Counted from the stretch's first letter, positions 13,401 to 62,713 are shown. The stretch: DNA of 64,000 nucleotides from Macrostomum lignano (GCA_002269645.1 NIVC01001262.1:62969-126968); one strand, 5' to 3'. Program-made: numbers and translations. Notes: generated from the sequence alone by a model not told the origin.

Positions 13401-16054
13401 CTGTCCCTGTCTGTCCCTGTCTGTCCCTGCCTGTCCCTGTCTGTCCCTGCCTGTCCCTGTCTGTCCCTGTCTGTCCCTGTCTGCCCCTGTCTGTCCCTGT
13501 CTGTCCCTGTCTGTCCCTGTCTGTCCCTGTCTGTCCCTGCCTGTCCCTGTCTGTCCCTGTCCCTGTCTGTCCCTGTCTGTTGCCTGTCCCAGTCTGTCTT
13601 GCCTGTCTCTGCCTGTCTCTGTTTGTCTGTGTCTCTCCCCGTCTGTCTGTGTCTCTTACTGTCTGTCCCTGTCTGTCCCTGTCTGTCCCTGTCTGTCTCT
13701 GTTTGTCCCTATCTGTCCGTGACTCTCCCTGTCTCTCCCTTGTCTCTCCCTGTCTCTCCCTTATCTCTCCCTGTCTTTCCCTGTCTCTTCCTGTCTCTCC
13801 CTGTCAAACACCTGCCTCAGCAGTTCCCACACTGGAGACAATTGCAGCTTTATTTACAATGCAATGAAACCCCGAGTCACCTGCGCTGAGGCTGCTGTGG
13901 CCATTCTGTGGGCTGGCTGCTGATCCAGACATCTGGCCTGGGAATGCATACGGGGCAGTTTAGTTATTTGACAAAGCAAAGAGCCGGCCAACGTGCCGCT
14001 CACAGGCGGTACAGTACAATGGGCTGCAATCAGGTAATTGTTCTCACAGGGTCACAGTCTGGCTGAGTAGCCGGGCGTCATGATTAGCGAGCAATAAAGC
14101 AATTAGCTGATTGTAAATTGCAAATGTAAATTAACATTGATTGGAGGTGACATTGATTGAGGGAGGTAAAATTATTTTATTAGTTGGCGTTGTTACACTT
14201 CTATTAAAACTGTGCGGTAGCAGACAAGAAAGCATTCCAGAGCCTTAAGATTGCATGAAATCTCTGTTGCGTCTCCTTTGGTCCAGCTACTACAGCCCAA
14301 AATTAGCTCAAAATAGCGCTTTTCATTTAGGATTCTCACTTTTTAACTTTTGGCCATAGACTACCTGACTAGCCTCCCGGCCTTAGACTACCTGACTAGC
14401 CTTCCGGCCATAGACTACCTGACTAGCCTCCCGGCCTTAGACTACCCGACTAGCCTCCCGGCCATAGACTACCTGACTAGCCTCCCGGCCTTAGACTACC
14501 TGACTAGCCTTCCGGCCATAGACTACCTGACTAGCCTCCCGGCCTTAGACTACCCGACTAGCCTCCCGGCCATAGACTACCTGACTAGCCTCCCGGCCTT
14601 AGACTACCTGACTAGCCTTCCGGCTATAGACTACCTGACTAGCCTCCCGGCCATAGACTACCTGACTAGCCTCGCGGCCATAGACTACCTGACTAGCCTC
14701 CCGGCCTTAGACTACCTGACTAGCCTCCCGGCCATAGACTACCTGACTAGCCTCCCGGCCTTAGACTACCTGACTAGCCTCCCGGCCTTAGACTACCTGA
14801 CTAGCCTTCCGGCCATAGACTACTTGACTAGCCTCCCGGCCATAGACTACCTGACTAGCCTCCCGGCCATAGACTACCTGACTAGCCTCCCGGCCATAGA
14901 CTACCTGACTAGCCTCCCGGCCATAGACTACCCGACTAGCCTCCCGGCCATAGACTACCCGACTAGCCTCCCGGCCTTAGACTACCCGACTAGCCTCCCG
15001 GCCATAGACTACCCGACTAGCCTCCCGGCCATAGACTACCTGACTAGCCTCCCGGCCTTAGACTACCTCACTAGCCTCCCAGCCATAGACTACCTCACTA
15101 GCCTCCCAGCCATAGACTACCTGACTAGCCTCCCGGCCTTAGACTACCTGACTTGCCTCCCGGCCTTAGACTACCTCACTAGCCTCCCAGCCATAGACTA
15201 CCTGACTAGCCTCCCGGCCATAGTCTACTTGACTAGCTCCCGGCCATAGCTTTCAGCTTAAAACTGTGGGAGCAGAGAGGATCAGAGAGCAGGCAAACAA
15301 CACGGCATAACGATCATTAAGTTGAGCCACATGTACTTTTAAGGGAAAGATCGTGTTCTGACGTTTGTAGATTTTCTGACGACAAGCGTCCGTTTAAATG
15401 TACATAGGAGGCAGAATGCCCACGAGGTTGCCGCGTGATTCTATGGCCAGAAAGTCTGCAGACCTTAGAACAGTCGGCTTTTCTCTGAAAGTACATCCGA
15501 CGTAATTTCTTTCTAGCTTTGCCGTATTGCTTGTCAGCTCGCTTCTCTCTGGATGGAAAGTTCAAGGCGAGGGACTCTGGTAGGACGTCTACCAGGTACT
15601 GAGGTAAGTTCAAGTTCACATGCACCTTTCAATGTCAGTTCTTGTTTTTGTTTTGTGTTATCGAACTAAAAACTCCGCGCCGATTTAAACAAAGAACAAC
15701 CCACCTGACGTAGTCGCCTGCCACCGACTTGAGCGGCAGCGGCTGCAGCGAGTGGTGCGGCTGCTGTCCGGACGTCCCGGACGTGGACGGGCCGCCGCCG
15801 CTGCCGCCACCGCCGCCGCCGCCGGTCGCCGCCTGCAGGCTGGACATCGGGAAGGCGGTCTGTCCGGCCCTCGCCCGCAGCATCAGCACTCGGCTGCCCT
15901 TGTGGACGAGGGTGGCCGGGGTGCCGGCCTCGGCCGGGTGAACCACAACGCCCGGGGTGACGAGTTCAGGCGCTGCCGGCTTGCGCTGCGGCAGCTGCCC
16001 GCCGGCCGAGGATTTCTGAGCCAGCGGGCTGCCCGACCAGCCGGGATTCTCCAT
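1210..16054 (-). CDS. KCNH2: ERG (ether-a-go-go-related, KCNH2/6/7 family) voltage-gated K+ channel; 10-exon model, about 906 aa
   Basis: Exons 15705-16054, 12733-13074, 12136-12277, 11396-11543, 6632-6903, 5843-6217, 4959-5148, 4370-4786, 3870-4089 and 1210-1474 join in frame at GT-AG sites (2721 nt). ERG-diagnostic motifs: [64 protein letters not shown], plus CNBHD and C-terminal coiled coil. Best read as a co-ortholog of KCNH2/6/7. Confidence 0.95.
1621..3263 (+). mobile_element. Defective piggyBac-like DNA transposon (PGBD4/DDE_Tnp_1_7 type) in the last ERG intron
   Basis: Imperfect TIRs CTCCGTTCCAGTCGGATGGTAAGCA (1621-1645) and TGCTTACCATAGCCGACCGGAACGGAG (3237-3263) flank transposase fragments. 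No clean TTAA TSD seen. Confidence 0.8.
2170..3047 (+). pseudogene. piggyBac transposase remnant, frameshifted and C-terminally truncated
   Basis: [20 protein letters not shown], then in another frame DYWS...[15 protein letters not shown]...[32 protein letters not shown]...IFVDK. The third catalytic Asp region and the Cys-rich domain are missing. Confidence 0.9.
3870..4089 (-). CDS. KCNH2: ERG exon 9 (C-terminal linker, start of coiled coil [12 protein letters not shown])
   Basis: 220 nt, phase 1 to 2, matching both neighbouring exons. Confidence 0.75.
4370..4786 (-). CDS. KCNH2: ERG exon 8 (cyclic-nucleotide-binding homology domain)
   Basis: [40 protein letters not shown]...[12 protein letters not shown]...VTFNL; aag acceptor, gtgagt donor. 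Confidence 0.97.
4959..5148 (-). CDS. KCNH2: ERG exon 7 (C-linker)
   Basis: [35 protein letters not shown]...TTHVPPG; gtgagt donor. Confidence 0.97.
5162..5815. repeat. Intronic minisatellite, ~18-nt unit CCGGTGTGCACTCTCTCA
   Basis: Visible tandem array filling the ERG intron 5149-5842. Confidence 0.95.
5843..6217 (-). CDS. KCNH2: ERG exon 6 (turret, pore helix, GFG filter, S6, start of C-linker)
   Basis: [31 protein letters not shown]; 375 nt, phase 0 to 0. Confidence 0.97.
6295..6500. repeat. Intronic minisatellite, 29-nt unit TCGCCTGTCACTTCCCCTGATCCTCTGAC
   Basis: About 7 tandem copies. Confidence 0.95.
6632..6903 (-). CDS. KCNH2: ERG exon 5 (S3-S4-S5)
   Basis: [16 protein letters not shown]...[26 protein letters not shown]...[11 protein letters not shown]; phase 1 to 0. 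Confidence 0.97.
6930..7430. repeat. Intronic minisatellite, 54-nt unit built from 18-nt subunits (CCCCAGCTCCAGCTTCAT-like)
   Basis: Tandem array starting about 25 nt from the acceptor of exon 5. Confidence 0.95.
9208..10190. repeat. Purine-rich minisatellite, ~19-nt unit GATCTGAGGGATGGGGAGG
   Basis: Visible tandem array. Confidence 0.95.
11396..11543 (-). CDS. KCNH2: ERG exon 4 (S2: [21 protein letters not shown])
   Basis: Canonical S2 motif; phase 0 to 1; gtgagc donor. Confidence 0.95.
11592..12085. repeat. Intronic minisatellite, 22-nt unit GATCTATCAGCTGTCTGGGACT
   Basis: Fills most of intron 11544-12135. Confidence 0.95.
12136..12277 (-). CDS. KCNH2: ERG exon 3 (S1: [30 protein letters not shown])
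   Basis: Canonical KCNH S1 motif; cag acceptor and gtgcgg donor. Confidence 0.95.
12362..12706. repeat. Compound microsatellite (ACTC)n-(AGTC)n
   Basis: Fills intron 12278-12732. Confidence 0.97.
12733..13074 (-). CDS. KCNH2: ERG exon 2 (proximal N-terminus ...[10 protein letters not shown])
   Basis: 342 nt, phase 2 to 2, donor gtagga; joins FVILHYSPF in frame. Confidence 0.8.
13075..13805. repeat. 10-nt minisatellite (CTGTCCCTGT)n abutting and supplying the exon 2 acceptor
   Basis: Array begins at the splice junction and decays toward 13800. Confidence 0.95.
14350..15247. repeat. 27-nt minisatellite GGCCATAGACTACCTGACTAGCCTCCC
   Basis: About 33 copies; source of the spurious [12 protein letters not shown]. 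Confidence 0.97.
15705..16054 (-). CDS. KCNH2: ERG exon 1 (putative start MENPGWSG..., low-complexity N-terminus)
   Basis: Open frame from ATG at 16054 to a phase-2 donor (ag|gtgggt) that matches the next exon. The true start could lie in an upstream exon (ctccag acceptor nearby). Confidence 0.65.
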
Positions 16055-18871: not shown

Positions 18872-20574
18872 GGGATCGGGATCGGGATCGGGATTGGGAT
18901 CGGGATCGGGATCGGGATCGGGATCGGGATTGGGATCGAGATCCCGATTGGGATTGGGATCGGGATTGGGATCGGGATCGGGATCGCGATTGAGATCGGG
19001 ATTGGGATCGAGATCGGGATCGGGATTGGGATCGGGATCGGGATCGGGATCGGGATCGGGATCGGGATCGGGATTGAGATCGGGATCGGGATCGGGATTG
19101 GGATTGGGATCGGGATTGGGATTGGGATTGGGATTGGGATCGGGATTGGGATCGGGATTGGGATTGGGATTGGGATCGAGATCGGGATTGGGATTGGGAT
19201 CGGGATTGGGATCGGGATCGGGATTGGGATTGAGATCGGGATTGGGATCGGGATCGAGATCGGGATTGGGATTGGGATCGGGATTGGGATCGGGATCGAG
19301 ATCGGGATCGGGATTGGGATCGCGATTGGGATCGGGATCGGGATCGGGATTGGGATTGGGATCGGGATTGGGATCGGGATCGGGATCGGGATTGGGATTG
19401 GGATCGGGATCGAGATCGGGATTGGGATTGGGATCGGGATTGGGATCGGGATCGAGATCGGGATTGGGATTGGGATCGGGATTGGGATCGGGATCGAGAT
19501 CGGGATTGGGATTGGGATCGGGATTGGGATCGGGATCGGGATCGCGATTGAGATCGGGATTGGGATCGAGATCGGGATCGGGATTGGGATCGGGATCGGG
19601 ATCGGGATCGGGATCGGGATCGGGATCGGGATTGAGATCGGGATCGGGATCGGGATTGGGATTGGGATCGGGATTGGGATTGGGATCGGGATTGGGATCG
19701 GGATCGGGATCGGGATCGGGATTGGGATCGGGATTGGGATCGGGATTGGGATTGGGATTGGGATCGAGATCGGGATTGGGATTGGGATCGGGATTGGGAT
19801 CGGGATCGGGATTGGGATTGAGATCGGGATTGGGATCGGGATCGAGATCGGGATTGGGATTGGGATCGGGATTGGGATCGGGATCGAGATCGGGATTGGG
19901 ATTGGGATCGGGATTGGGATCGGGATCGGGATCGGGATCGCGATTGAGATCGGGATTGGGATCGAGATCGGGATCGGGATTGGGATCGGGATCGGGATCG
20001 GGATCGGGATCGGGATCGGGATCGGGATTGAGATCGGGATCGGGATCGGGATCGGGATTGGGATCGGGATTGGGATCGGGATCGGGATCGGGATCGGGAT
20101 TGGGATCGGGATTGGGATTGGGATCGGGATTGGGATCGAGATCGGGATTGGGATTGGGATCGGGATTGGGATCGAGATCGGGATCGGGATCGGGATTGGG
20201 ATCGGGATCGGGATCGGGATCGGGATTGGGATCGAGATCGGGATCGGGATCGAGATCGGGATCGGGATCGGGATCGGGATTGGGATCGAGATCGGGATCG
20301 GGATTGGGATCGGGATCGGGATCGCGATTGAGATCGGGATTGGGATCGAGATCGGGATCGGGATTGGGATCGGGATCGGGATCGGGATCGGGATCGGGAT
20401 CGGGATCGGGATTGAGATCGGGATTGGGATCGGGATCGGGATCGGGATTGGGATCGGGATTGGGATCAGGATTGGGATCGGGATCGGGATCGGGATCGGG
20501 ATTGAGATCGGGATTAGGATCGGGATCGGGAAAGGGATCAGGATCGGGATTGAGATCGGGATTGGGATCGGGAT
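18872..20574. repeat. Hexamer satellite (GGGATC/GGGATT)n, telomere-like and G-quadruplex-prone
   Basis: About 1.7 kb of GGGATY, with GAGATC/GCGATT variants recurring in larger blocks. Confidence 0.97.
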
Positions 20575-21283
20575 TTGGAAATCAAACCATGCTCACCATG
20601 CCGAGCGTCATGCGGAGATCAGTAGACTATCGAATTGCTTACAGAAGCAGCAGTATGAACAAAGCACAATCTTCTTCACCTTTACGAACCGGAGGAAACC
20701 AACAGAAAGATGTCCAAAGCAGACAGACGGGAGCTGTGAGCAGCAATGATGGAGTCTGGCTGAGTAGGCCAGAGAGTGGGTAAAATACGGCTGGGGCTGT
20801 CAGAGCCCCCTGCTTTCTATTGGCCAGCAGCTGCCCAGATGCTGTTTATTATAAAATCTACTTGGGTTTGCGGGATGCCCGAAAAACTTCTAATTTTATA
20901 CTTTGGAGTTTCCGCCTTCACCAATTTCTTCTGTCACACTGCGGGCCTGCAGCTGCTCGGCCTCCGGCGCGCGCCTCCCCCTCGTTGGGACTCAAAGACA
21001 GACTCCAAGGATCTGGCCCCGAAAATCTTATAATCCAAGCAGCCTTGTGTGCTCTGGCATCACAATGCGCTGTCCAACTAGAGGCTCAGAGGGCTCATTG
21101 TTTGCTGAAATTTCCCAGCAGGAAATGAGAGAGGGGCCCGCTTGACTCTCTTTTTCTTCCTTCCTCACCGCTGGCGTTTCCCAGCCTCCACTCAGTGCAG
21201 CTGGACCGCCATTGTGCCAGCCACCACTCTTCAGTGGTCAGGCGGTGAAATTCACTGAAGATGCACTTGGCCTGCCTGCTTAT

Positions 21284-31337: not shown

Positions 31338-32475
<1,138 letters not shown>

Positions 32476-32959
32476 AGAATGTAGCGCTGCAAGACGTCTG
32501 CCTTCGTTTTCGCTGAAATTACTGGCATTTAGTCCTAAAGAAGTGCTTAAAACGGAATAAAAAATTAACATTGACATATTGGCAATGGCAAATTATTTTT
32601 AGGAGACGTTTTCCCACTGCGCTACTTGAACTAGGCTATACAGCAAATATGTGGCAAACGGAAAAATCTGACAAAATCTTTTTTTTGATTTTTGCAGCCC
32701 GAGCCAGCTGGGAACATCGGGGCTCGTCAACAGAAAGTTGCTCATCGTTTATTTTGCTTGGTATCCGCAGTGACTGGCGAACAGCATTTGGGATGGATTT
32801 TAAGCTCAGAAGAAGAGGGATATTAAAATCGGGTTGGGAGGCAAAACTGTCTTCTCTGAGCGGGCATCAGGGCTCATCAGTTCAGTCTGGCTGGTTCTCT
32901 AGTTTTCATCACCCGTGGAACTCGCTGATCAGTTCTTGATGGTCCATGCTCAGGGCAAT

Positions 32960-34568
32960 TCATTCGTCACCTTCGTCACGCCAGTCCTCGAAAGCAGCTT
33001 CGTCATGATCGGAATGGCTGTCTTCGTCCATCAGATATTCGTCGTCGTAATTGCCGTTGCGCTTTCCTAGAAATCCGCGGGCGCGCTTTCCTAGAAAACC
33101 TCTGGAACGTTTTCCAAGAAAACCACGCGCCCTCTTGCCTAGGAAGCCTCGTGCTCGCTTTCCAAGAAAACCACGGGCTCGCTTTCCGAGAAATCCCCGA
33201 GCTCGCTTTCCTAGAAAACCGCGTGCTCGCTTTCCTAGAAAACCGCGTGCTCGCTTTCCTAGAAAACCACGTGCTCGCTTTCCTAGAAAACCGCGTGCTC
33301 GCTTTCCTAGAAAACCACGTGCTCGCTTTCCTAGAAAACCGCGTGCCCGTTTCTCCTCAGCCTCGAGCAGATGAGCATCGGACGCATCGGGGGCTCCGCG
33401 CTCGCCCACCGCAAGGGAGTCGACGTGAGCGATGTCGCTGGAGACGGCTGAAACACGGCGAAAAAGGTAGCTTTAGGCTTCCATTGGTAAATCAATTCTT
33501 TTTTCTTTGAAAATAGATTCTACTATACTAAATAAGGTTTGTCTCTATATATCTAGGTATGTGTGAAATATTAAAAAAACAGCTTAACCGATTTTTATCA
33601 GACTTGCACGATTCGATCTGACAATACCAGACAGACACAGTGTCAGAAACAATAACAAACAGGCACAGTGACAGACACGGGGACGGACACAATACCAGAC
33701 GGACACAGTGACGGACACAGTGACGGACACAATACCAGACGGACACAGTGACGGACACAGTGACGGACACAATACCAGACGGACACAATACCAGACGGAC
33801 ACAGTGACGGACACAGTGACGGACACAATACCAGATGGACACAGTAACGGACACAATACCAGACGGACACAGTAACGGACACAGTGATTGACACAATGAA
33901 GGACACAATACCAGACGGACACAGTGACGGACACAATACCAGACGGACACAGTGATGGACACAGTGACGGACACAGTGCTGGACACAGTGACAGACACAG
34001 TGACAGACACAGTGACAGACACAGGACACAGTGAGAGACACAGTGACAGAAACAGTGACAGACACAGTGACAGACACAGTGACAGACACGGTGATAGACA
34101 CAGTGACAGACAAGTGACAGACACGGTGACAGACAAGTGACAGACACGGTGACAGACACAGTGACGGACACAATACCAGACGGACACAGTGCTGGACACA
34201 GTGACAGACACAGTGACAGACACAGGACACAGTGACAGACACGGTAACAGACACAGTGACAGACACAATACCTGACGGACACAGTGATTGACACAATGAC
34301 GGACACAATACCAGACGGACACAGTGACGGACACAATACCAGACGGACACAGTGACGGACACAATACCTGACGGACACAGTGACGGACACAATACCTGAC
34401 GGACACAGTGACGCACACAATAGCAGGCGGACACAGTGACAGACACAATACCAGACAGACACAGTGACAGACACAATACCAGACGGACTCACGCGCGCTG
34501 TCGGAGGCCCCCAGGATGGCGGCCAGCAGCAGGAGCAGCAAACTCGGCAAGCAGATTGCGGACTTCAT
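32960..34568 (-). CDS. Secreted neuropeptide precursor, 187 aa: signal peptide, acidic spacer, 11x ARGFL-amide and 1x SRGFL-amide, acidic tail
   Basis: Exon 1 (34493-34568) MKSAICLPSLLLLLLAAILGASDSA with gtgagt donor, phase 1. Exon 2 (32960-33447) tttcag acceptor, in frame. Twelve xRGFL-G-KR units with dibasic cleavage sites and Gly amidation donors; synonymous variation among copies. Confidence 0.93.
33620..34487. repeat. Intronic GACAC-based minisatellite (GGACACAGTGAC / GGACACAATACCAGAC) in the neuropeptide intron
   Basis: Starts immediately after the donor and fills most of intron 33448-34492. Confidence 0.93.
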
Positions 34569-35544
34569 CTTGCGTTTCCCTTTGCTTGGCGCAATTCCTC
34601 TGTTTGAGCTTCACCTGAAGGGGAGGCGGAATGCAGCGGCGCGCCTGGGTCAGGTTGTTACTAATCTGCAACATCAATCCAGCTGTCCCAGCCTCCCGCC
34701 CCGCCCCATTCGGCTTTGATTGATGGGGGCTGCCTGGCACCCCAGCAGTCTGGTTGGCAACCGCCAGCGCCGTCTCCACTTCGTCTCCCCATCGCTTTGA
34801 TCCCCTGCTACTCAAAAAGTTGCTTGCAGGCCGCGGGGGGCTGGCGGGAAAGAAGGAGAACCGAGGGGGGGATTCCCTTTCTATTGCACAGAGAGGACAA
34901 ACACACAGATGACCGGTGGGTCTGGAGAAACAGTTCAGGTGGAATCCCTGCAGCTGGGCATCCCAGGACCTTCCGTTCAGCTGGTGAGCTCGGAAACCGG
35001 ACACGGAAGCCGCGGAGCTGCCAATTTACCCGCCGCTGAGGGTTGAATTTCAGGTCAGCCTCCTCTGCCCTTCATCTGCTAATTTGCTTGCAATCAAGGT
35101 GATCTTGTGTTGCTTTCTTGTTTTCCCTCCGACCTGCTAAGTGGGATGGACGGTCACGCTTCCAGTGGATCGCTTTTCTGAGGGAGGGGTCGCTTCGATT
35201 GGGCAGAAACACGGATTGGGCAGTCCTGAAGCCTCCCATGAGGAAATAATTGTCCAAAGCAGTGTCAAATGGCACATGAAAAAGCAGATAAAAAGAAATG
35301 GAAAAATATTTGTCGATTAGTAACAAAAACGCATGCAATCGATTGAGTTGAGGAAAGTTATAAATGTACCAATTGGCTCGTAAACTTGCAAGATCTGCAA
35401 AAGAATTGCAGATTTTGCTAGGACAATTATTTCCCCCTGCCCGGGCTCCAACGAGCTTCCAAAATAGTGCAAACTTTATGCTCTTGGTTCCTTGATGCGT
35501 TACTCAATCACCGATGATATTGCTCAACTTCCATGCTGCGTTCG

Positions 35545-43348: not shown

Positions 43349-46300
43349 TCAATCACAGCTCCCGAGTTTCGAGTAGGTCAGCTTCTCAGGTGGCCGTCGC
43401 CGGCGTGCAGGCTGCAGTCCGCAGGGCGTCTCTGGCGGCTCCGGCTCCGGGTGCTCCGCGCCGGTCCCGGTCGAGTCCGCAGCTTCAGCTGGCTCGGTCC
43501 CGGCTGCCGGACCGTCAGGTTTGTCGCTCTCAACTCGCCGGCCCCGCAGTTGGTCGGCATGACGGCGCCAGGTCAGGCCGTCGCTCGTTTCGACTCGGAA
43601 GCTCAGCGGCCCAGTCTGCTCGAGAACTTTTGCTGGTTGCCAGGCCGCCGCATTAGGCCGGTAGTCCCTGGCCCAGGCCTCCGACCACGGCTCCTCCGGC
43701 AGCTCCCGCGACCGCCGGTCGTGCTGTCGTTTCTGGGCAGATTGCTCCCGCAGTACTCGATCCCGGGCTGACGGCCGCAGCAAGTCCATTCGAGTCCGGA
43801 GCTGCCGCTTCAGGAAGAGCTCCGCTGGTGTCCGACCGGTCGTTGGGTGCGGGCTAGCTCGGTAGCCCAGCAGCCAGTTGCACAGGCGGATGTCGAGGTC
43901 CGGCTGACTGCTCCGTGACGCCTCCATGGCCATCTTGAACGACTTCACCAGCCGTTCCACCAGTCCGTTGGTCTTGGCGTGATATGGACTGCTTCTTGTG
44001 TGGCGAATTCCATTTGCTTTGCAGAAATCGCTAAATCCTTGACTGATGAATGCTGGACCATTGTCCGATACCAGTTCTCTCGGCAGGCCCCATTGTGCAA
44101 ACAACACTCGCAGCTTGCGAACCAGCTCGGCCGATTCGAGTGTTGACACGGCCTCCACATGCGGCCACTTTGAGTGCGCGTCGACTACGAGGAGAAACTG
44201 GCGGCCTCGAACCGGCCCGGCAAAGTCAACGTGGATGCGGTCCCAGGGCTGGTCTGGCCACACCCAGGGGTGCAGTGGAGCCAGCACCGGATGCAGCTTA
44301 ACGGATTGGCAGGCTTGGCAGCTGCTGGCAACCGACTCGATGTCAGAATCCATTCCTGGCCACCAGACGAAGGTTCTGGCGACACTTTTCATCCGGGCCA
44401 TGCCGAAATGTTCCACGTGTAACTCGCGCAGAACTCCAGGTCGCAACGCTTCCGGAACCAGCACGCGAGTTCCCCAGATCACGCAGCCGTCTTCCACGCT
44501 TAGTTCTAGTCGACGACGAAAGTAGGGCTCGAGCCGCGGCGGAACCGACTCTGGCCAGCCAGTCATTATCATCCGGAGAACATCTCGGAGCTCGTCATCC
44601 CGCTTCGTTGCTGCCGCTACATCCGCCGCCGTCAATGGAAACTCGCCCGTCAGCTGACAGACCCGATCGTCGTCGTCTGGGCTGTCGTCCTTCATCTGCA
44701 GGGGCAAGCGAGACAGGCCGTCTGCGTTGCTGTGCTGAGCAGTCTTGCGGAACCGGATGCTGTAGCTGTACCCTGACAGCAGCAGTGCCCATCTCTGAAG
44801 TCGCCCTGCTGCAGTCGGCGAGATGCCAACCTTCGGTCCGAAAATCGTCGTCAACGGCTGATGATCCGTAATTATCGTGAAGCTCCGGCCGAACAGGTAC
44901 TGGTGGAACCACTTGATGGCGAACACGATAACGAGGGCTTCTTTCTCAATTTGCGAGTAATTTCGCTCCGCTGCTGACAGCGTCCTTGAAGCAAAAGTCA
45001 CCGGCCGTTCCGAGCCGTCCTCCATCGTGTGGGACAGCACCGCGCCGATGCCGACCGATGAAGCATCCGCGGCCACCACCACTGGAAGCTGCTCGTTGAA
45101 ATGCGTCAGCACGCTGTCCGAACTCAGTTCTTGCTTAAGATGGTCCCAGGCTCGGTCCTCCGTCTCAGCCCACCGCCAGTCCGTCTCCTTCCTCAACAGT
45201 TGATACAGAGGAGCAGCGATCGTGGAGAAGTCCTTGACATGTCGAGCATAGTAGTTTGCGAGGCCCAAGAATGATCGCAGCTCTGATACTGTCGCTGGCT
45301 TCGGGCTGTTGACTATTGCTTCCACCTTCTGAGGCAGCTTCTTGACTCCGTCCTTGCTCAGCAACGAGCCCAGGTATTCGACTTCTTCTTGCAGAAATTT
45401 GCACTTGATTCGCTTCAGCCGCAAGCCCGCCGCTCTCAGCCTGGTCAGTACCTCTCGAAGCGCTGCTAGGTGCTCACTCATTGACGGACCGGAGACCAGG
45501 ATGTCATCAATGCGACAACAGACTCCCGGCACGCCCTTCAAAAGTGTTTCCATCAGCCTCTGGCAAATCGCAGGAGCCGAACTGACGCCAAATGGCAACC
45601 GGAGGTACTCGAAAAGCCCTTTATGCGTGTTGATGGTCGTCAGCTTGCAGCTCTCTTCGTCGAGTGGAAACTGAAGATAACATTGTGACAGATCGAGTTT
45701 TGAGAACAGCTGACCCCGTCCCATCTGCTCGTAAAGCTCTTCAGGCGTAGGCAGCGGGTACTGGTCGATGTGGAGCTGAGGGTTCAACGTCAGTTTATAG
45801 TCGCCGCACAGTCGGACTGAGCCGTCCGCCTTGAGTACCGGAACCACTGGCGTAGTCCACTCACTGTAGGTCACCGGGCGGATGATCCCTTTGTTGAGCA
45901 TGTCCTGGAGCTCGAGCTCAAGCTTGTCCCGCACTGCGAATGGCACGGGTCTGGCCTTGCAGAATCGAGGCTGTGCGTCACTTTTAAGTCTCAGTGCGAC
46001 TGTCTGATCCTTCAACTGCCCCAGGCTCTCGTCGAAAACATCAGCGAACTCCTCCAGCATCTGGTCGAGAGGCCCGCTGTTCTGCGCCGGCGCCTGGCTG
46101 ATCTGGTTGGCAAACAACTGAGTCCAGTTGAGTCGCACTTTTTCCAGCCAATTGCGTCCTAGCAATGGGCAGGCTCCGGTCTGACTGGTGACCACCAGCG
46201 GCAGCTTATCATGCTGTCTTCCGTCGTAGTTGACCCTGACCTCGGCTGTTCCCTTGACTTGTATTGGCTCGCCCGTCCAGGTCCGGAGTCGCAGGCGTGT

Positions 46301-47227
46301 TGGTGTCAGCGGAGGTCGGCCGAGCTGCTTCCACACCGACTCCGGTACGAGGCTGACGCAGGCACCGGTGTCCAGCTGCATGGTGAGGGGCTGGTCATTC
46401 ACCAGCAGGCTTACGCTGATCTTCTTGGCCGAAGCAGTGACTTGCGAAATCCAGCCAGTTGCTGCTTCCTCCTCCTCTTCCGTTTGCATTGCGTGCGCTG
46501 GTCCGTTCTCTGGCCGTCCGGCTTTCGTTGTTCTGGAGGCTTTCTTGGCTGAGCGGCAAACTTTCTGCAGGTGTCCAACTTTCCCGCAGTTGTGGCACTT
46601 TGCGGTCCTGAAGTGGCAGGCTGCCGACAGGTGGCCTTTCAATCCGCACCTGTAGCACGCCTTCGAGTCTGGCGCTACCTGCTGGACTGAGCTGACGTCT
46701 GAGCTCGATTTCCACTGCTCCGTTTCCGACTTAGCAATCTCCGCCGCGAGGGCAATTTTCTTGGCCGCATCCAGCGTGAGCTTCTCCTCCATCAGGAGTC
46801 GCTGCTGGGTCCGCTGGTCCCGAAGACCGCAGACGAAACAGTCTCGGAGAGCTTCTTCTCGAAACCCCCCGAACTCGCACGAATCGGCCAGATTCCGCAG
46901 CGCAGCCAGAAATTGAGCAGCCGTCTCTCCGTCCTTTTGTGCTCGCTTGTAGAACTTGAACCGTTCAGCGATTACTGGCTTCTTCGGTTTGAAGTACTTT
47001 TGAAGGTGCTCGGTGAGGGCGCTGTATTGCAGATCTGTTGGCTTGGTCGGACTGCAGAGATCCCGCAGGACTGCGTAGCATCGTTCGCCAATCAATGTCA
47101 GAAACACTGCCTTCTTCTTGTCGTCGCCTTCTATGCCGTTTGCAAGCATGTAAGAGTCCATTCGCTCTTGATAGGCGTCCCAATCTTTGCCTTCCTCGTA
47201 AGGCTCTAGTTGTCCAACTGAAGCCAT
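43349..47227 (-). CDS. Gag-Pol polyprotein, 1292 aa (2 CCHC knuckles, aspartic protease, RT, RNase H, integrase)
   Basis: CYRCGLKGHLSAAC and CHNCGKVGHLQKVC; LDTGA; RLCGDYK...RIDDILV; AADAS/EKEAL/TDHQPL/NADGLSRL; HHCC, VDFAG, SDNG, NGLVER. No stops. Confidence 0.97.
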   Translation of the reverse strand: MASVGQLEPYEEGKDWDAYQERMDSYMLANGIEGDDKKKAVFLTLIGERCYAVLRDLCSPTKPTDLQYSALTEHLQKYFKPKKPVIAERFKFYKRAQKDGETAAQFLAALRNLADSCEFGGFREEALRDCFVCGLRDQRTQQRLLMEEKLTLDAAKKIALAAEIAKSETEQWKSSSDVSSVQQVAPDSKACYRCGLKGHLSAACHFRTAKCHNCGKVGHLQKVCRSAKKASRTTKAGRPENGPAHAMQTEEEEEAATGWISQVTASAKKISVSLLVNDQPLTMQLDTGACVSLVPESVWKQLGRPPLTPTRLRLRTWTGEPIQVKGTAEVRVNYDGRQHDKLPLVVTSQTGACPLLGRNWLEKVRLNWTQLFANQISQAPAQNSGPLDQMLEEFADVFDESLGQLKDQTVALRLKSDAQPRFCKARPVPFAVRDKLELELQDMLNKGIIRPVTYSEWTTPVVPVLKADGSVRLCGDYKLTLNPQLHIDQYPLPTPEELYEQMGRGQLFSKLDLSQCYLQFPLDEESCKLTTINTHKGLFEYLRLPFGVSSAPAICQRLMETLLKGVPGVCCRIDDILVSGPSMSEHLAALREVLTRLRAAGLRLKRIKCKFLQEEVEYLGSLLSKDGVKKLPQKVEAIVNSPKPATVSELRSFLGLANYYARHVKDFSTIAAPLYQLLRKETDWRWAETEDRAWDHLKQELSSDSVLTHFNEQLPVVVAADASSVGIGAVLSHTMEDGSERPVTFASRTLSAAERNYSQIEKEALVIVFAIKWFHQYLFGRSFTIITDHQPLTTIFGPKVGISPTAAGRLQRWALLLSGYSYSIRFRKTAQHSNADGLSRLPLQMKDDSPDDDDRVCQLTGEFPLTAADVAAATKRDDELRDVLRMIMTGWPESVPPRLEPYFRRRLELSVEDGCVIWGTRVLVPEALRPGVLRELHVEHFGMARMKSVARTFVWWPGMDSDIESVASSCQACQSVKLHPVLAPLHPWVWPDQPWDRIHVDFAGPVRGRQFLLVVDAHSKWPHVEAVSTLESAELVRKLRVLFAQWGLPRELVSDNGPAFISQGFSDFCKANGIRHTRSSPYHAKTNGLVERLVKSFKMAMEASRSSQPDLDIRLCNWLLGYRASPHPTTGRTPAELFLKRQLRTRMDLLRPSARDRVLREQSAQKRQHDRRSRELPEEPWSEAWARDYRPNAAAWQPAKVLEQTGPLSFRVETSDGLTWRRHADQLRGRRVESDKPDGPAAGTEPAEAADSTGTGAEHPEPEPPETPCGLQPARRRRPPEKLTYSKLGSCD

Positions 47228-47240
47228 TCTCGTCGCCAAT

Positions 47241-47425
47241 TGTAATGAAGTCAAGTCGCTTATTCTGGAGTAAACTCAGTTGAGGCAAAACCCTCCACGC
47301 TCTGTATATTTTATAGGCCAAGGGGCACGGTGGCCCGCGCATGTACATTACCGTACGTACTGCTAGCTAGGCTTACTAAACAAGCTCCACCCCTACCACG
47401 CGGCCCCACCCCATAAGTCATGACA
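47241..47425 (-). repeat. 5' LTR
   Basis: 185 bp; one T/G difference from the other LTR. Confidence 0.97.
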
Positions 47426-51253: not shown

Positions 51254-52961
51254 TCAGTTGTCGTAGGCGGCCTTGATCATGCGGCCGCCCAGGATCACGG
51301 TGTTCAGCAGCAGGGTGAACAGGCCGATGTAGCCGAAGGCGCCGCGCATTCGCTTCTTCGGGTCGCCGGTTGAGTAGCCCTGGGCGTACACTACTCGGCC
51401 GGCCAGGTAGATGGCGGCGCAGGCGGCCGAGCACCTGGGGGAGGGGTTAGGGGATTTATTTGCTAAGCTGTCCTCTGTTGAGATCGGGCAGATTCCCCAC
51501 AAAATGTTGGCAGTAGAATTAATCAGCCCCAGTTAGTTTTACATGGACTTGCTTTACACATAGGAGCTGCCATCTTAGCTGCTGCAAATTCGACTCGGCT
51601 CTTGCGCTTGCAGCACCACACCGAAATTACAACACCGGAACCTCACAACACCGGTACCTTACAACACCGGTACCTTACAGCACCGGAACCTCACAACACC
51701 GGAACCTCACAACACCGGAACCTTACAACACCGGAACCTCACAACACCGGTACCTTACAACACCGGAACCTCACAACACCAGAACCTCACAACACCGGTA
51801 CCTTACAGCACCGGAACCTCACAACACCGGAACCTCACAACACCGGAACCTTACAACACCGGAACCTCACAACACCGGTACCTTACAACACCGGAACCTC
51901 ACAACACTGGAACCTTACAACACCGGAACCTCACAACACCGGTACCTTACAACACCGGTACCTTACAACACCGGTACCTTACAAAACCGGAACCTCACAA
52001 CACCGGTACCTTACAACACCGGTACCTTACAACACCGGTACCTTACAACACCGGTACCTTACAACACCAGTACCTTACAACACCGGTACCTTACAAAACC
52101 GGAACCTCACAACACCGGTACCTTACAACACCGGTACCTTACAACACCGGTACCTTACAACACCGGTACCTTACAACACCGGAACCTCACAACACCGGTA
52201 CCTTACAACACCGGTACCTTACAACACCGGTACCTTACAAAACCGGAACCTCACAACACCGGTACCTTACAACACCGGTACCTTACAACACCGGTACCTT
52301 ACAACACCGGTACCTTACAACACCGGTACCTTACAACACCGGTACCTTACAACACCGGTACCTTACAACACCGGTACCTTACAACACCGGAACCTCAGAA
52401 CACCAGAACCTCACAACACCGGTACCTTACAGCACCGGAACCTCACAACACTGGAACCTCACAACACCGGTACCTTACAGTACCGGAACCTCACAACACC
52501 GGAACCTTACAACACCGGAACCTCACAACACCGGTACCTTACAACACCGGAACCTCACAACACTGGAACCTTACAACACCGGAACCTCACAACACCGGTA
52601 CCTTACGACACGGAATTTCAAACCGGAACCTTTTAACACCGGAACCTCACAACACCGGAAGTTATCGCGCCGCTCACCTGGGAGCCTGCAGGCCGCCAAA
52701 CACCAGCATGAAGTAGAAGAACGGCATCGACTCCAGGTAGTTCTGGTGCGAACGTTGCACGCAGTTGAACTCCTTGCTATCCTTGCTGTACATGTCCGGG
52801 TATTCCACTCCGAACTTCTTGCGGGCCTGCATGACCCGGCCAGCCAGGTAATAGTTGACAAAGAACCCGCCAGAGCCGGCCAGAACCACCCAGCCGTAGT
52901 GGCGGGGCAGGCCCTGCTGCAGGTGCGGGTTCACAGTCTTGATGGCGTTCATCAGATGCAT
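51254..52961 (-). CDS. MGST3: Microsomal glutathione S-transferase 3 (MAPEG family), 2 exons (52678-52961, 51254-51434), about 154 aa
   Basis: YGWVVL...VMQARKKFGVEYPDMYS...FNCVQRSHQNYLE...GGLQAPR|CSAA...GRVVYAQGYSTGDPKKRMRGAFGYIG; phase-2 GT-AG junction. Confidence 0.95.
51625..52657. repeat. 16-nt minisatellite ACAACACCGGTACCTT / ACAACACCGGAACCTC in the MGST3 intron
   Basis: Ends about 20 nt from the donor. Confidence 0.97.
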
Positions 52962-60831: not shown

Positions 60832-62713
60832 TCAAACGCGATTCTGCGGCGACTTCTTGGAGGCCGGCGACTTCTTGGAGCCTGGCGACTTCTTGGAGCC
60901 TGGCGAGCGCAGCCTCAGCGAGGAGCCCAAGCCACTCGACTTCTTCAAAATCGACCGCTCCGGCGTTTTATCGTCACCCGAAGCCGTCGGCGTAACAACC
61001 CGGTCCTTCTTGTTGAATCGCTTGCGAAATATCTTGCCAAATGTTACGGAACGATTCTGTTTTCCCTCGCTGTCGCAGTCAGCACTCTGGGGCGTGGACA
61101 GAAGCAGCTGCTGCTTCGGCGTTGCGGACTGCGATGCCGGGGTGACGCTGCAGTCCGCTGACACTGCGGGCGACATGCGCGCGCGCTTAGCTGATGGCGG
61201 CGTACTGCTGCCCGCACCGGGAGCCGTCAAAGGCGACAAAGACGGCTGCTTGCGCTTGCCACCGGCTGGGGACTCCGGCTTGACAGAGTCCTTGGGAGAC
61301 TTCGAGGTGGCGGGCGATTTCTCTTTGGCCAAGCCCTGAGGTGATTTTTTATTATTTGAGACCTGGGGCGATTGCTGGACAGCAGGCGATTTTTCTTTGG
61401 CTTTGGCCGGGGCTGGGCCTTTTGGCGATTTTTTTATGACAGGCGACTTCTCTTTGGCTGAAACTTCAGGCGCTCCTTGGATGGCGGGCGATTTCTCATT
61501 GGATTTTGGCGACTGCCCAGACTGCTTGGCAGTTCTTGGGCTTTGGGGGGACTTGGCCACTCCAGGCTGCGCTTCAATGCTGGCACCCTGAGGTGAAGCG
61601 CCAGCAGCAATGGCTTTCTTTTTGCCAAAGCCAATGAAGACTTGGCGCCTCCAACAGTCTGCTTTTGCTTGGCCAAAGCTTTCGGGGTCTTGACCTTGGC
61701 CAGCTTAGCGCCTGACGCTGGTGCACTGGGCTGCGTATTCGAACTCCCTGCTTGGCCGTCCTCAACTAGACGTTTTGCTTTCTTTTTTTTTCTCCGCTTG
61801 TTCTCCTGTTTAATGAGGCGGGCAACCGCCGCTGTGATTTCCTCCTTGCCCAGGGTCGGTCCGGCGGGCACCAGGCCCTCCGGTCCAACATTGCCGCTCA
61901 GAATATTTCTAAACGTCTTGTACCAGTGAAACAGTCGCTTTCGATTGGGGCTTTTCACGCTGGGATCTGATCCCAGGGCAAAGAGGCACTTGCACAGCTC
62001 CTCCATGTCGATGTCAACTAAGCAGACTTCCGACTCAACCGAGTCCTGCTGCGCGGACTCCGCCTGGTAGAGTGCCTGATCGGCCAGATACTGCAGCACC
62101 GCCTGCTCAACCTTGTCCACCACGTGGTGCTTGTGCATCCCGGACGCCACAATATCGATGAAGGGTCGCAAAATTGCCAGCACAGCATCTGGACCGGCGG
62201 TGGTGATGCTGAGCTCCTCGCAAACAATGTCAGCCAAGTGCAGCTTCAGGCCGTTGCTAGGCTGGTTGAAATCGGCATTAACAACGCTGTCCCTGAGGAT
62301 TTGAACGAACTGGCTGACCAGTTCGCTGCTCCATTCGTTGGACTGCAAAAACGCCAGGGAGGCTTTGAGGAAGCGACGCACGAGCATCATGAACTTGTCC
62401 GCGCGCCAGAAGTCGATTGAAGACCATTCTCTGGCTTCTGTCTCGAATAGCGCTTTAATAAAGTTCAACTTGTTCTTTGGACTGGATATCGCACCCAGAA
62501 GAGAGCAGATCATGTCTACAATGTCCTCGTGCTTAATTGGCTGGTCCTGCATCCACAGCATGTAGTGCAGGCCTTTCATTATGAGCATCATGTTATCAAA
62601 TGATACTGCCTCTGCACCAGAAAGAAGCTTCTTTGCCCTAAGAAGCCCTTGATTCGGACTGGCTCCTCACTAGCAGCCAGCTTCTTGCAGACCAATTTAA
62701 TCTGCTCAAGCAT
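60832..62713 (-). CDS. RRP1: RRP1/Nop52-family nucleolar protein (RRP1B-like), with two apparent 1-nt frameshifts (~62643 and ~61620)
   Basis: KKLAASEE...MKGLHYMLWMQDQP...ETEAREWSSIDFWRADKFMMLVRR (Nop52 domain), then a Lys/Ser-Pro-rich tail with RSVTF and SILK motifs. ATG at 62713 follows a cag acceptor. Confidence 0.88.

What the first reader, a model, noticed from the sequence alone, without database searches (positions are those of the whole stretch)
32960..34568. Multi-copy ARGFLamide neuropeptide precursor hidden among non-coding repeats
A complete prohormone: signal peptide, acidic spacer ending EEKR, twelve xRGFL-G-KR cassettes (11 ARGFL, 1 SRGFL) and an acidic tail. PC1/2 cleavage plus PAM amidation would release ARGFL-NH2 pentapeptides. 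From memory these resemble flatworm npp-2-type RG(L/M/F)(I/M)amides, but I do not recognise this exact peptide, and the copy number is high. In this repeat-dense window it would easily be masked as a tandem repeat.
Basis: partly seen in the sequence, partly recalled or inferred. Interest (0 to 1): 0.7.

Follow-up and report, generated by a model that had tools for sequence, protein, structure and literature searches.

The report
Flatworm FLamide-type neuropeptide precursor gene
This is a real two-exon gene of the flatworm Macrostomum lignano that encodes a secreted precursor carrying twelve copies of a small amidated peptide (ARGFL-NH2), a new member of the known spiralian FLamide / flatworm npp-2 neuropeptide family, which public annotations list only as an uncharacterised protein with too few copies.

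Summary
On the minus strand, exon 1 (34568-34493) encodes a signal peptide. A 1045-nt GT-AG intron filled with a minisatellite follows. Exon 2 (33447-32960) encodes an acidic spacer ending in EEKR, twelve contiguous (A/S)RGFL-G-KR cassettes and a 32-residue acidic tail.

The cassettes are under selection for the peptide. Of 28 substitutions against the consensus, only one changes an amino acid; random placement gives a mean of 17.8 and never fewer than 10.

The window is Macrostomum lignano. GenBank PAA87360.1 ("hypothetical protein") uses the same splice junction. It lists 7 cassettes, although its own genomic span is base-for-base identical to the window and encodes 12. The exact 187-aa product is absent from a 15-billion-protein collection.

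The nearest relatives are annelid, mollusc and nemertean FLamide and FVamide precursors (AKYFLa, ARPFLa, ARYFLa).

Most likely mechanism, inferred rather than shown: convertase cleavage at KR, basic-residue trimming and Gly amidation give 11 ARGFL-NH2 and 1 SRGFL-NH2.

Verdict: a genuine gene and a new member of a known kind. The main practical gain is a corrected gene model. Interest is modest. An earlier description in McVeigh et al. 2009, which I could not read, cannot be excluded.

The parts
34493..34568 (-). Exon 1 coding part. ATG at 34568-34566. Encodes MKSAICLPSLLLLLLAAILGASDSA plus the first base of codon 26, that is, the signal peptide. A phase-1 intron follows.
   Evidence: The hydropathy core spans residues 4-19, and -3/-1 rule cleavage candidates lie after residues 20-22.
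33448..34492 (-). Intron of 1045 nt, from donor GTGAGT to acceptor TTTCAG. About 860 nt of it is a degenerate 12/28/40-nt minisatellite (33630-34488).
   Evidence: All three sense frames stay open through the minisatellite (ORFs of 346, 302 and 277 aa), so the read-through ORF is a repeat artefact.
33347..33447 (-). Start of exon 2: the acidic spacer propeptide (..VSSDIAHVDSLAVGERGAPDASDAHLLEAEEKR), ending in the first dibasic site.
   Evidence: Net charge of the spacer is -6.
33059..33346 (-). Twelve contiguous 24-nt cassettes encoding ARGFLGKR (11 copies) and SRGFLGKR (cassette 11, 33083-33106). Cassettes 1-6 are near-identical DNA; cassettes 7-12 each have distinct DNA.
   Evidence: Pairwise codon differences are 211 synonymous against 11 non-synonymous.
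32960..33058 (-). Acidic C-terminal tail NGNYDDEYLMDEDSHSDHDEAAFEDWRDEGDE (32963-33058) and stop codon TGA (32960-32962).
   Evidence: Net charge of the tail is -14.
32748..32753 (-). AATAAA polyadenylation signal, 206 nt downstream of the stop codon.
   Evidence: Function is inferred only.
34569..34614 (-). Candidate 5' UTR, 46 nt long, beginning just after a CCCCTTCAG acceptor-like site (AG at 34616-34615). This could be a cis- or spliced-leader trans-splice acceptor.
   Evidence: Sequence. 38.8% of M. lignano genes are trans-spliced (PMC5730564). Not tested here.

Best explanation
This is a two-exon Macrostomum lignano gene for a secreted multi-copy neuropeptide precursor of the spiralian FLamide / flatworm npp-2 kind.

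Shown by the sequence: the exon-intron structure, the signal-peptide-like N-terminus, 12 contiguous (A/S)RGFL-G-KR cassettes, and selection acting on the peptide sequence.

Inferred from the established prohormone pathway:
- Signal peptidase removes about 20-22 residues.
- A PC2-type convertase cuts after each KR.
- A carboxypeptidase trims the K and R.
- Peptidylglycine alpha-amidating monooxygenase converts the C-terminal Gly into an amide.
- The products are 11 ARGFL-NH2 and 1 SRGFL-NH2, plus acidic spacer and tail peptides.

The peptides would act on a G-protein-coupled receptor that has not been identified. By analogy with Platynereis FLamide (in a ciliomotor neuron) and Smed-npp-2 (in the central nervous system and penis papilla), a neuromodulatory role in ciliary or muscular locomotion or in reproductive organs is plausible but untested.
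For: - Structure and unique in-frame GT-AG junction.
- Same junction in two independent public models.
- Hydrophobic N-terminus with -3/-1 cleavage candidates.
- Selection on the peptide: 1 of 28 substitutions is non-synonymous against a null mean of 17.8, and Arg is encoded by 5 different codons.
- Best non-self hits are named FLamide precursors (Urechis, Platynereis F8UKT4), a Pecten 'PRQFV-amide-like' protein, and FLamide-type precursors that are unnamed or annotated only as hypothetical (for example Paralvinella and Lamellibrachia).
- The exhaustive search finds FLamide and FVamide precursors as the real relatives.
- Smed-npp-2 has the same contiguous RGxxGKR build.
- A PC2 homologue is expressed in the M. 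lignano nervous system and is essential (PMC4490696).
- An AATAAA signal lies 206 nt after the stop codon.
Against: - No transcript reads, peptidomics or expression data could be examined here, so processing and amidation are inferred.
- No SignalP-type predictor was available.
- Family assignment rests on a 5-8-residue motif, which can arise by convergence.
- The Cys-rich prodomain found in Smed-npp-2 and many annelid FLamide precursors is absent here.
- Orthologues of the Platynereis FLamide receptor were reported only in annelids and brachiopods (PMC8557429), so the receptor in flatworms is unknown.
- KRAR could itself be a cleavage site and give GFL-NH2 instead.
Confidence: 0.85

Rival explanations
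1. It is a real amidated-peptide precursor, but a lineage-specific invention. On this view its likeness to FLamide and npp-2 precursors is convergence on a short hydrophobic amidated C-terminus with standard GKR processing sites, not common descent.
For: Similarity outside the cassettes is nil. The spacer and tail find nothing, and the Cys-rich prodomain is missing. The homology scores are driven by the repeated xFLGKR words. Some high-scoring hits are plainly unrelated low-complexity repeats.
Against: Four of five peptide residues plus the G-K-R match the commonest annelid forms (ARPFL, ARYFL, ARHFL, ARQFL). Some annotated FLamide precursors also lack the Cys domain (Urechis P0004). Flatworm npp-2 prodomains resemble annelid FLamide prodomains once the cassettes are removed (hhalign 88%, E 3e-6), which puts the family in flatworms.
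Confidence: 0.2
2. The precursor is cut after KRAR (a basic residue at P4, P3 and P1), so the released peptide is the tripeptide GFL-NH2 or a mixture, not ARGFL-NH2.
For: Every cassette junction reads G-K-R-(A/S)-R-G, giving K/R at P4 and P3 and R at P1. Smed-npp-2 has the analogous KRR-GLIG, and its small peptide was not among the peptides listed in the peptidomic tables I searched; only the C-terminal peptide was listed.
Against: Related annelid peptides keep A-K/R as part of the mature peptide; AKYFLamide is the named Platynereis peptide (PMC3503879). The Ala is conserved in 11 of 12 cassettes across four different codons, which fits a residue of the mature peptide. Classic furin-type sites prefer Arg at P4 (general knowledge).
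Confidence: 0.12
3. It is a non-coding tandem repeat that happens to lie in an open frame, or a dead gene copy.
For: The window is 36% tandem repeats. Such arrays leave many frames open: there are antisense ORFs of 107 and 119 aa over the same array, and other arrays give spurious Pfam hits.
Against: The substitution pattern is synonymous only in this frame. There are no indels in the array. The start codon, signal peptide, canonical splice sites, stop codon and AATAAA are all intact. Transcriptome-based GenBank annotation exists for the identical locus.
Confidence: 0.02
4. It is a secreted repetitive protein that is not processed into peptides, for example a gland or adhesive product.
For: There is a signal peptide and a repetitive, charged body. 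M. lignano has secretory adhesive organs (mentioned in PMC10396302).
Against: Every repeat ends in the G-K-R amidation and cleavage signature. The repeat unit is only 8 residues, and the nearest relatives are all peptide precursors.
Confidence: 0.02

Closest known systems
Annelid/spiralian FLamide precursors (Platynereis dumerilii FLamide, UniProt F8UKT4, AKYFLamide; Urechis unicinctus FLamide; ARPFLamide and ARYFLamide forms in other annelids)
   Same: Signal peptide followed by multiple A-[KR]-x-F-L-G-K-R cassettes, 5-13 copies, with acidic spacers or a tail. These are the best non-self hits (E 1e-15 to 1e-28).
   Different: Position 3 is Gly (ARGFL), which among the proteins retrieved here occurs as a cassette only in M. 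lignano entries. The cassettes are contiguous, with no acidic spacers between them. There is no Cys-rich prodomain and no conserved PRNNFLamide-type second peptide.
Flatworm npp-2 (Smed-npp-2, UniProt E3CTL0: 6-7 copies of RGLIamide; P0050: RGMIamide and RGLIamide)
   Same: Flatworm origin. Contiguous cassettes with no spacers. R-G followed by two hydrophobic residues, then G-K-R. A short non-repeated C-terminal tail.
   Different: The peptide ends in -FL rather than -LI or -MI and carries an extra N-terminal Ala. The C-x2-C...CC...C prodomain is absent.
Mollusc/annelid FVamide and PRQFVamide (fulicin-related) precursors
   Same: The same xRxF[VLI]-G-KR cassette logic. High-scoring in the exhaustive search (ARMFV, PRQFV, LRDFV). 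Conzelmann et al. 2013 group FLamide and FVamide with fulicins as one lophotrochozoan family (PMC3890597).
   Different: C-terminal Val rather than Leu. These precursors are usually much longer, with 13-23 copies separated by acidic spacers.

Membership tests
Amidated multi-copy neuropeptide/prohormone precursor | N-terminal signal peptide | tested here: met
   Basic n-region (MK), hydrophobic core at residues 4-19, small residues at -3/-1 (cleavage candidates after 20-22), and a phase-1 intron straight after it. Tested by hydropathy and rule only; no SignalP.
Amidated multi-copy neuropeptide/prohormone precursor | Peptide copies flanked by dibasic (KR) cleavage sites, with a C-terminal Gly as amide donor | tested here: met
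   EEKR followed by 12 copies of xRGFL-G-KR.
Amidated multi-copy neuropeptide/prohormone precursor | Selection on the peptide sequence rather than on the DNA repeat | tested here: met
   1 non-synonymous change among 28 substitutions; null mean 17.8 and minimum 10 in 20,000 permutations; the other five frames fail.
Amidated multi-copy neuropeptide/prohormone precursor | Processing enzymes present in the organism | not tested
   Literature only. A PC2 homologue (RNA815_2403.2) is expressed in the nervous system and essential in M. lignano (PMC4490696). The amidating enzyme was not looked for.
Amidated multi-copy neuropeptide/prohormone precursor | Mature amidated peptide detected; expression in neurons or endocrine cells | not testable with these tools
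   No peptidomic or expression data were reachable.
Spiralian FLamide family | Repeated peptides ending in -FLamide with the A-[KR]-x-F-L-G-[KR]-R pattern | tested here: met
   ARGFLGKR compared with AKYFLGKR, ARPFLGKR, ARYFLGKR and ARHFLGKR.
Spiralian FLamide family | Closest database relatives are FLamide precursors | tested here: met
   Caveat: the scores are driven by the repeated cassette.
Spiralian FLamide family | Cys-rich prodomain C-x2-C-x(4-14)-CC-x(6-10)-C | tested here: not met
   Absent from the protein and from the whole window. It is not universal, however. 23 distinct FLamide-type precursors have it, while the annotated Urechis FLamide and several AKYFLamide precursors do not.
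Spiralian FLamide family | Cognate receptor of the Platynereis FLamide-receptor type (rhodopsin-gamma GPCR) | not testable with these tools
   Orthologues are reported only from annelids and brachiopods (PMC8557429). The M. lignano receptor set could not be searched here.
Flatworm npp-2 | Contiguous R-G-(hydrophobic)-(hydrophobic)-G-K-R cassettes after one prodomain | tested here: met
   BLASTP against Smed-npp-2 aligns cassette to cassette with E 5e-15. Sequences.
Flatworm npp-2 | Peptide ends in -[LM]Iamide; Cys-rich prodomain present | tested here: not met
   The peptide ends in -FL, and no Cys domain is present.

The most novel reading that the evidence does not exclude
ARGFLamide may be the intermediate form that links the flatworm npp-2 peptides (RG[LM]Iamide) with annelid/mollusc FLamides (A[KR]xFLamide) as one ancient spiralian peptide system. 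Supporting this, the npp-2 prodomain resembles the annelid FLamide prodomain (hhalign 88%). M. lignano would have lost the prodomain and expanded the array to 12 copies. Canonical FLamide-receptor orthologues are reported only from annelids and brachiopods, so this transgenic, RNAi-amenable flatworm would be a good place to find the unidentified receptor.
Probability: 0.4. Interest if true: 0.45.

Novelty: new member of a known kind. Interest (0 to 1): 0.3.

Why it matters
The practical gain is a corrected gene model for a model flatworm. The genome encodes 12 peptide copies. GenBank PAA87360.1 shows 7, UniProt A0A1I8ISS2 is a 572-aa fusion labelled 'Transmembrane protein', and A0A1I8IRI5 is a frame-shifted fragment labelled 'RRP7 domain-containing'. 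None is annotated as a neuropeptide.

It also places an FLamide-type peptide in an early-branching flatworm, and it suggests that the npp-2 peptides of planarians and their relatives belong to the same spiralian family. That gives a defined ligand for receptor deorphanisation and RNAi in an animal that moves by cilia.

It does not reveal a new kind of system.

Tried and rejected
- Literature searches for ARGFL, RGFLamide and RGFLGKR strings and for the gene and protein accessions found nothing relevant in open full texts.
- McVeigh et al. 2009, the likely place of any earlier Macrostomum FLamide description, is not held. The figure in PMC3503879 that lists Macrostomum peptides cannot be read.
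- The supplements of Conzelmann et al. 2013 hold no Macrostomum entry in the parts stored.
I used the exon-2 ORF instead.
- The read-through reading of the 346-aa Cys/Val-rich ORF from the same ATG (33528-34568) was rejected. All three frames are open across the minisatellite, and both public models splice it out.
- I looked for a second locus or a Cys-domain exon in the window and found none.
- There is no Pfam family above cut-off for this protein, for Platynereis FLamide or for Smed-npp-2.
- Several strong hits in the exhaustive search are unrelated low-complexity repeats (RGFAGS, RGISGS and similar) and were discarded.

Full report
**1. The observation**

Read on the minus strand, the region holds an ATG at 34568. 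It is followed by 25 codons for MKSAICLPSLLLLLLAAILGASDSA and then a consensus donor, GTGAGT. About 1 kb downstream a pyrimidine-rich stretch ends in TTTCAG, just before 33447.

I joined every donor position from 34488 to 34498 to every acceptor position from 33443 to 33451. Only 34493/33447 is both GT..AG and in frame.

The spliced CDS is 564 nt and gives a 187-aa product:
- a hydrophobic N-terminus;
- the spacer DSAPVSSDIAHVDSLAVGERGAPDASDAHLLEAEEKR (net charge -6);
- twelve contiguous 8-residue cassettes (11 ARGFLGKR and 1 SRGFLGKR, at 33346-33059);
- the tail NGNYDDEYLMDEDSHSDHDEAAFEDWRDEGDE (net charge -14);
- a TGA stop at 32962-32960.

An AATAAA signal lies 206 nt after the stop codon.

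**2. Is it more than a repeat that happens to be open?**

The window is full of tandem arrays. There are 33 arrays with a TRF score of at least 300, covering about 36% of the 64 kb. Such arrays leave many frames open. Two antisense ORFs overlie this very array, and three sense ORFs run through the intronic minisatellite. Openness alone is therefore worthless as evidence.

The substitution pattern is decisive:
- The 12 cassettes comprise 8 different DNA sequences but only 2 peptides.
- The 11 variable columns are all third codon positions or CGN/AGR first positions, apart from the single Ala-to-Ser change.
- Pairwise codon differences are 211 synonymous against 11 non-synonymous.
- I redistributed the 28 substitutions at random over the cassette. 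This gives a mean of 17.8 non-synonymous codons and never fewer than 10 in 20,000 trials. The observed number is 1.
- In the other five frames, four are almost wholly non-synonymous; the fifth (antisense frame 1) shows 141 synonymous against 58 non-synonymous differences.
- The array has 84% matches and no indels.

This is purifying selection on the peptide.

**3. Whose gene is it?**

The best hit of the spliced protein is P0001. This is GenBank PAA87360.1 / UniProt A0A267GMX5, 'hypothetical protein BOX15_Mlig001753g3' of Macrostomum lignano. It is identical to the window's product throughout, except that it has 7 cassettes instead of 12.

Its locus is NIVC01000236.1:243119-264727 in assembly GCA_002269645.1, fetched as L001. 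The gene span there is 1609 bp and is base-for-base identical to window 32960-34568. That genomic copy therefore also encodes 12 cassettes.

The number 7 equals the six cassettes with unique DNA (cassettes 7-12) plus one. This is what a short-read transcript assembly would give if it collapsed the six near-identical cassettes 1-6 into a single copy. The GenBank annotation was built from mapped transcript assemblies, and transcripts overlapping repeat annotations were filtered out (PMC5730564). The collapse itself is my inference.

Two other public models are also wrong:
- P0040 (A0A1I8ISS2, 572 aa, 'Transmembrane protein') is a fusion with upstream sequence. It holds a variant copy with 5 cassettes, then ARKR, then 1 more cassette, and an NGDY tail.
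- P0021 (A0A1I8IRI5, 'RRP7 domain-containing') reads the 5' UTR and exon 1 out of frame.

P0001 and P0040 both carry the ...SDSAPVSSD... junction. The exact 187-aa product is not among about 15 billion catalogued proteins.

The window is not the same contig stretch as L001. The flanks are about 97.6% identical with indels. This fits the known redundancy of that assembly (PMC5730564).

**4. Relatives**

After the M. lignano entries, the word-indexed search returns these:
- FLamide precursors: Urechis 'FLamide' and Platynereis 'FLamide neuropeptide' F8UKT4 (AKYFLamide);
- Paralvinella, with ARPFLamide;
- Lamellibrachia, with RGPFLamide;
- a nemertean (Tubulanus) with xREFLamide;
- Pecten 'PRQFV-amide-like', with ARYFLamide and RRFFLamide.

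The exhaustive HMMER scan of 1.84 billion representatives gave 491 hits at E <= 1e-3. The real relatives were FLamide and FVamide/PRQFVamide precursors. Some unrelated low-complexity repeats also scored well.

Among everything retrieved, ARGFL occurs as a cassette only in the M. lignano entries. Copy numbers in the family run from 5-13 for FLamide to about 23 for FVamide, so 12 is ordinary.

The literature treats FLamide and FVamide as a lophotrochozoan family related to fulicins (PMC3890597). It also says such peptides are ubiquitous in lophotrochozoans (PMC8557429).

**5. The flatworm connection**

The supplement of Collins et al. 2010 gives Smed-npp-2 as a signal peptide, a Cys-rich prodomain and 6 RGLIGKR cassettes plus a short tail. 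The database copy, P0048, has 7 cassettes. A further relative, P0050, has RGMIamide and RGLIamide.

The npp-2 prodomain carries C-x2-C...CC-x8-C. The same pattern occurs in 23 distinct annelid-type FLamide precursors. With the cassettes removed, a profile-profile comparison of the two prodomain sets gives 88% probability and E 3e-6. There is a caveat: the domain is short and Cys-driven, and I picked the annelid set using that Cys pattern.

M. lignano lacks this prodomain, and no exon for it exists in the window. So do the annotated Urechis FLamide and several AKYFLamide precursors. Its absence therefore does not exclude membership.

ARGFL shares A-R-x-F-L with the annelid peptides and R-G-hydrophobic-hydrophobic with npp-2. 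Its contiguous, spacer-free array is also the npp-2 build.

**6. Mechanism**

What is shown: the gene structure, the cassette grammar and selection on the peptide.

What is inferred from the standard secretory-peptide pathway:
- removal of the signal peptide (candidate sites after residues 20-22);
- convertase cleavage after KR;
- carboxypeptidase trimming;
- amidation of the exposed Gly.

The expected products are 11 ARGFL-NH2 and 1 SRGFL-NH2.

M. lignano has a PC2 homologue that is expressed in the nervous system and is essential (PMC4490696).

One uncertainty concerns the N-terminus. Every junction reads K-R-(A/S)-R|G, which could also be cleaved to give GFL-NH2. I rate this at about 0.12, because Ala is conserved through four different codons and related annelid peptides keep A-K/R in the mature form.

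The receptor is unknown. The Platynereis FLamide receptor is a rhodopsin-gamma GPCR whose orthologues were found only in annelids and brachiopods (PMC8557429).

On function, I can offer only analogies. FLamide marks a ciliomotor neuron in Platynereis larvae (PMC5531833). Smed-npp-2 is expressed broadly in the central nervous system and in the penis papilla (PMC2953531).

**7. Novelty and limits**

No open full text holds the peptide string or the gene identifiers. [quoted passage not shown] 2009. I could not read that paper, so prior description of this peptide from ESTs is possible.

There is no Pfam family for any of these precursors.

I file this as a new member of a known kind. The concrete gains are a corrected 12-copy gene model and a plausible bridge between npp-2 and FLamide. 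Interest is 0.3.

Noticed in passing
window 32565-34833 compared with L001 (NIVC01000236.1): A 2,267-bp block covering the whole gene, including its 860-nt intronic minisatellite and its UTRs, has zero differences between the window and the second genomic copy. The flanks differ by about 1-2% with many indels, so about 20-40 differences would be expected by chance. Gene conversion, a very recent duplication or an assembly patchwork could explain it.
   Followed up: partly
L001 10001-11609; proteins P0001, P0040, P0021: All three public models of this gene are wrong in different ways. PAA87360.1 has 7 of the 12 cassettes, although its own DNA encodes 12. A0A1I8ISS2 is a 572-aa fusion named 'Transmembrane protein'. 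A0A1I8IRI5 is an out-of-frame fragment named 'RRP7 domain-containing'.
   Followed up: yes
proteins P0048 and P0050 compared with annelid FLamide precursors: The Cys-rich prodomain of flatworm npp-2 (C-x2-C...CC-x8-C) matches the prodomain of many annelid FLamide precursors once the peptide cassettes are removed (hhalign 88%, E 3e-6). This suggests npp-2 and FLamide are one family. I do not know whether this has been stated in print.
   Followed up: partly
window 43349-47254 (-): A 1301-aa open reading frame has protease, reverse transcriptase, RNase H and integrase domains. This is a Ty3/gypsy-type LTR retrotransposon pol. LTR elements make up 21% of this genome according to PMC5730564. The element's ends were not mapped.
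   Followed up: no
window 61434-62591 (-): An ORF has a strong Nop52 (nucleolar protein) domain, E 1e-45, and is probably an exon of a housekeeping gene.
   Followed up: no
whole window, e.g. 18872-20579, 14352-15249, 51627-52658: 33 tandem arrays cover about 36% of the window. Several stay open in multiple frames and give spurious Pfam hits (KRTAP, Med31, AvrPto) that should not be read as genes.
   Followed up: partly
window 34614-34620 (-): An acceptor-like CCCCTTCAG|G lies 46 nt upstream of the ATG. It could be a spliced-leader trans-splice site or the 3' end of a 5'-UTR intron. 38.8% of M. lignano genes are trans-spliced.
   Followed up: no
window 31338-32476: A 1.1-kb (AGAC)n microsatellite starts about 270 nt beyond the gene's AATAAA signal. 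Its length differs between the window and L001.
   Followed up: no
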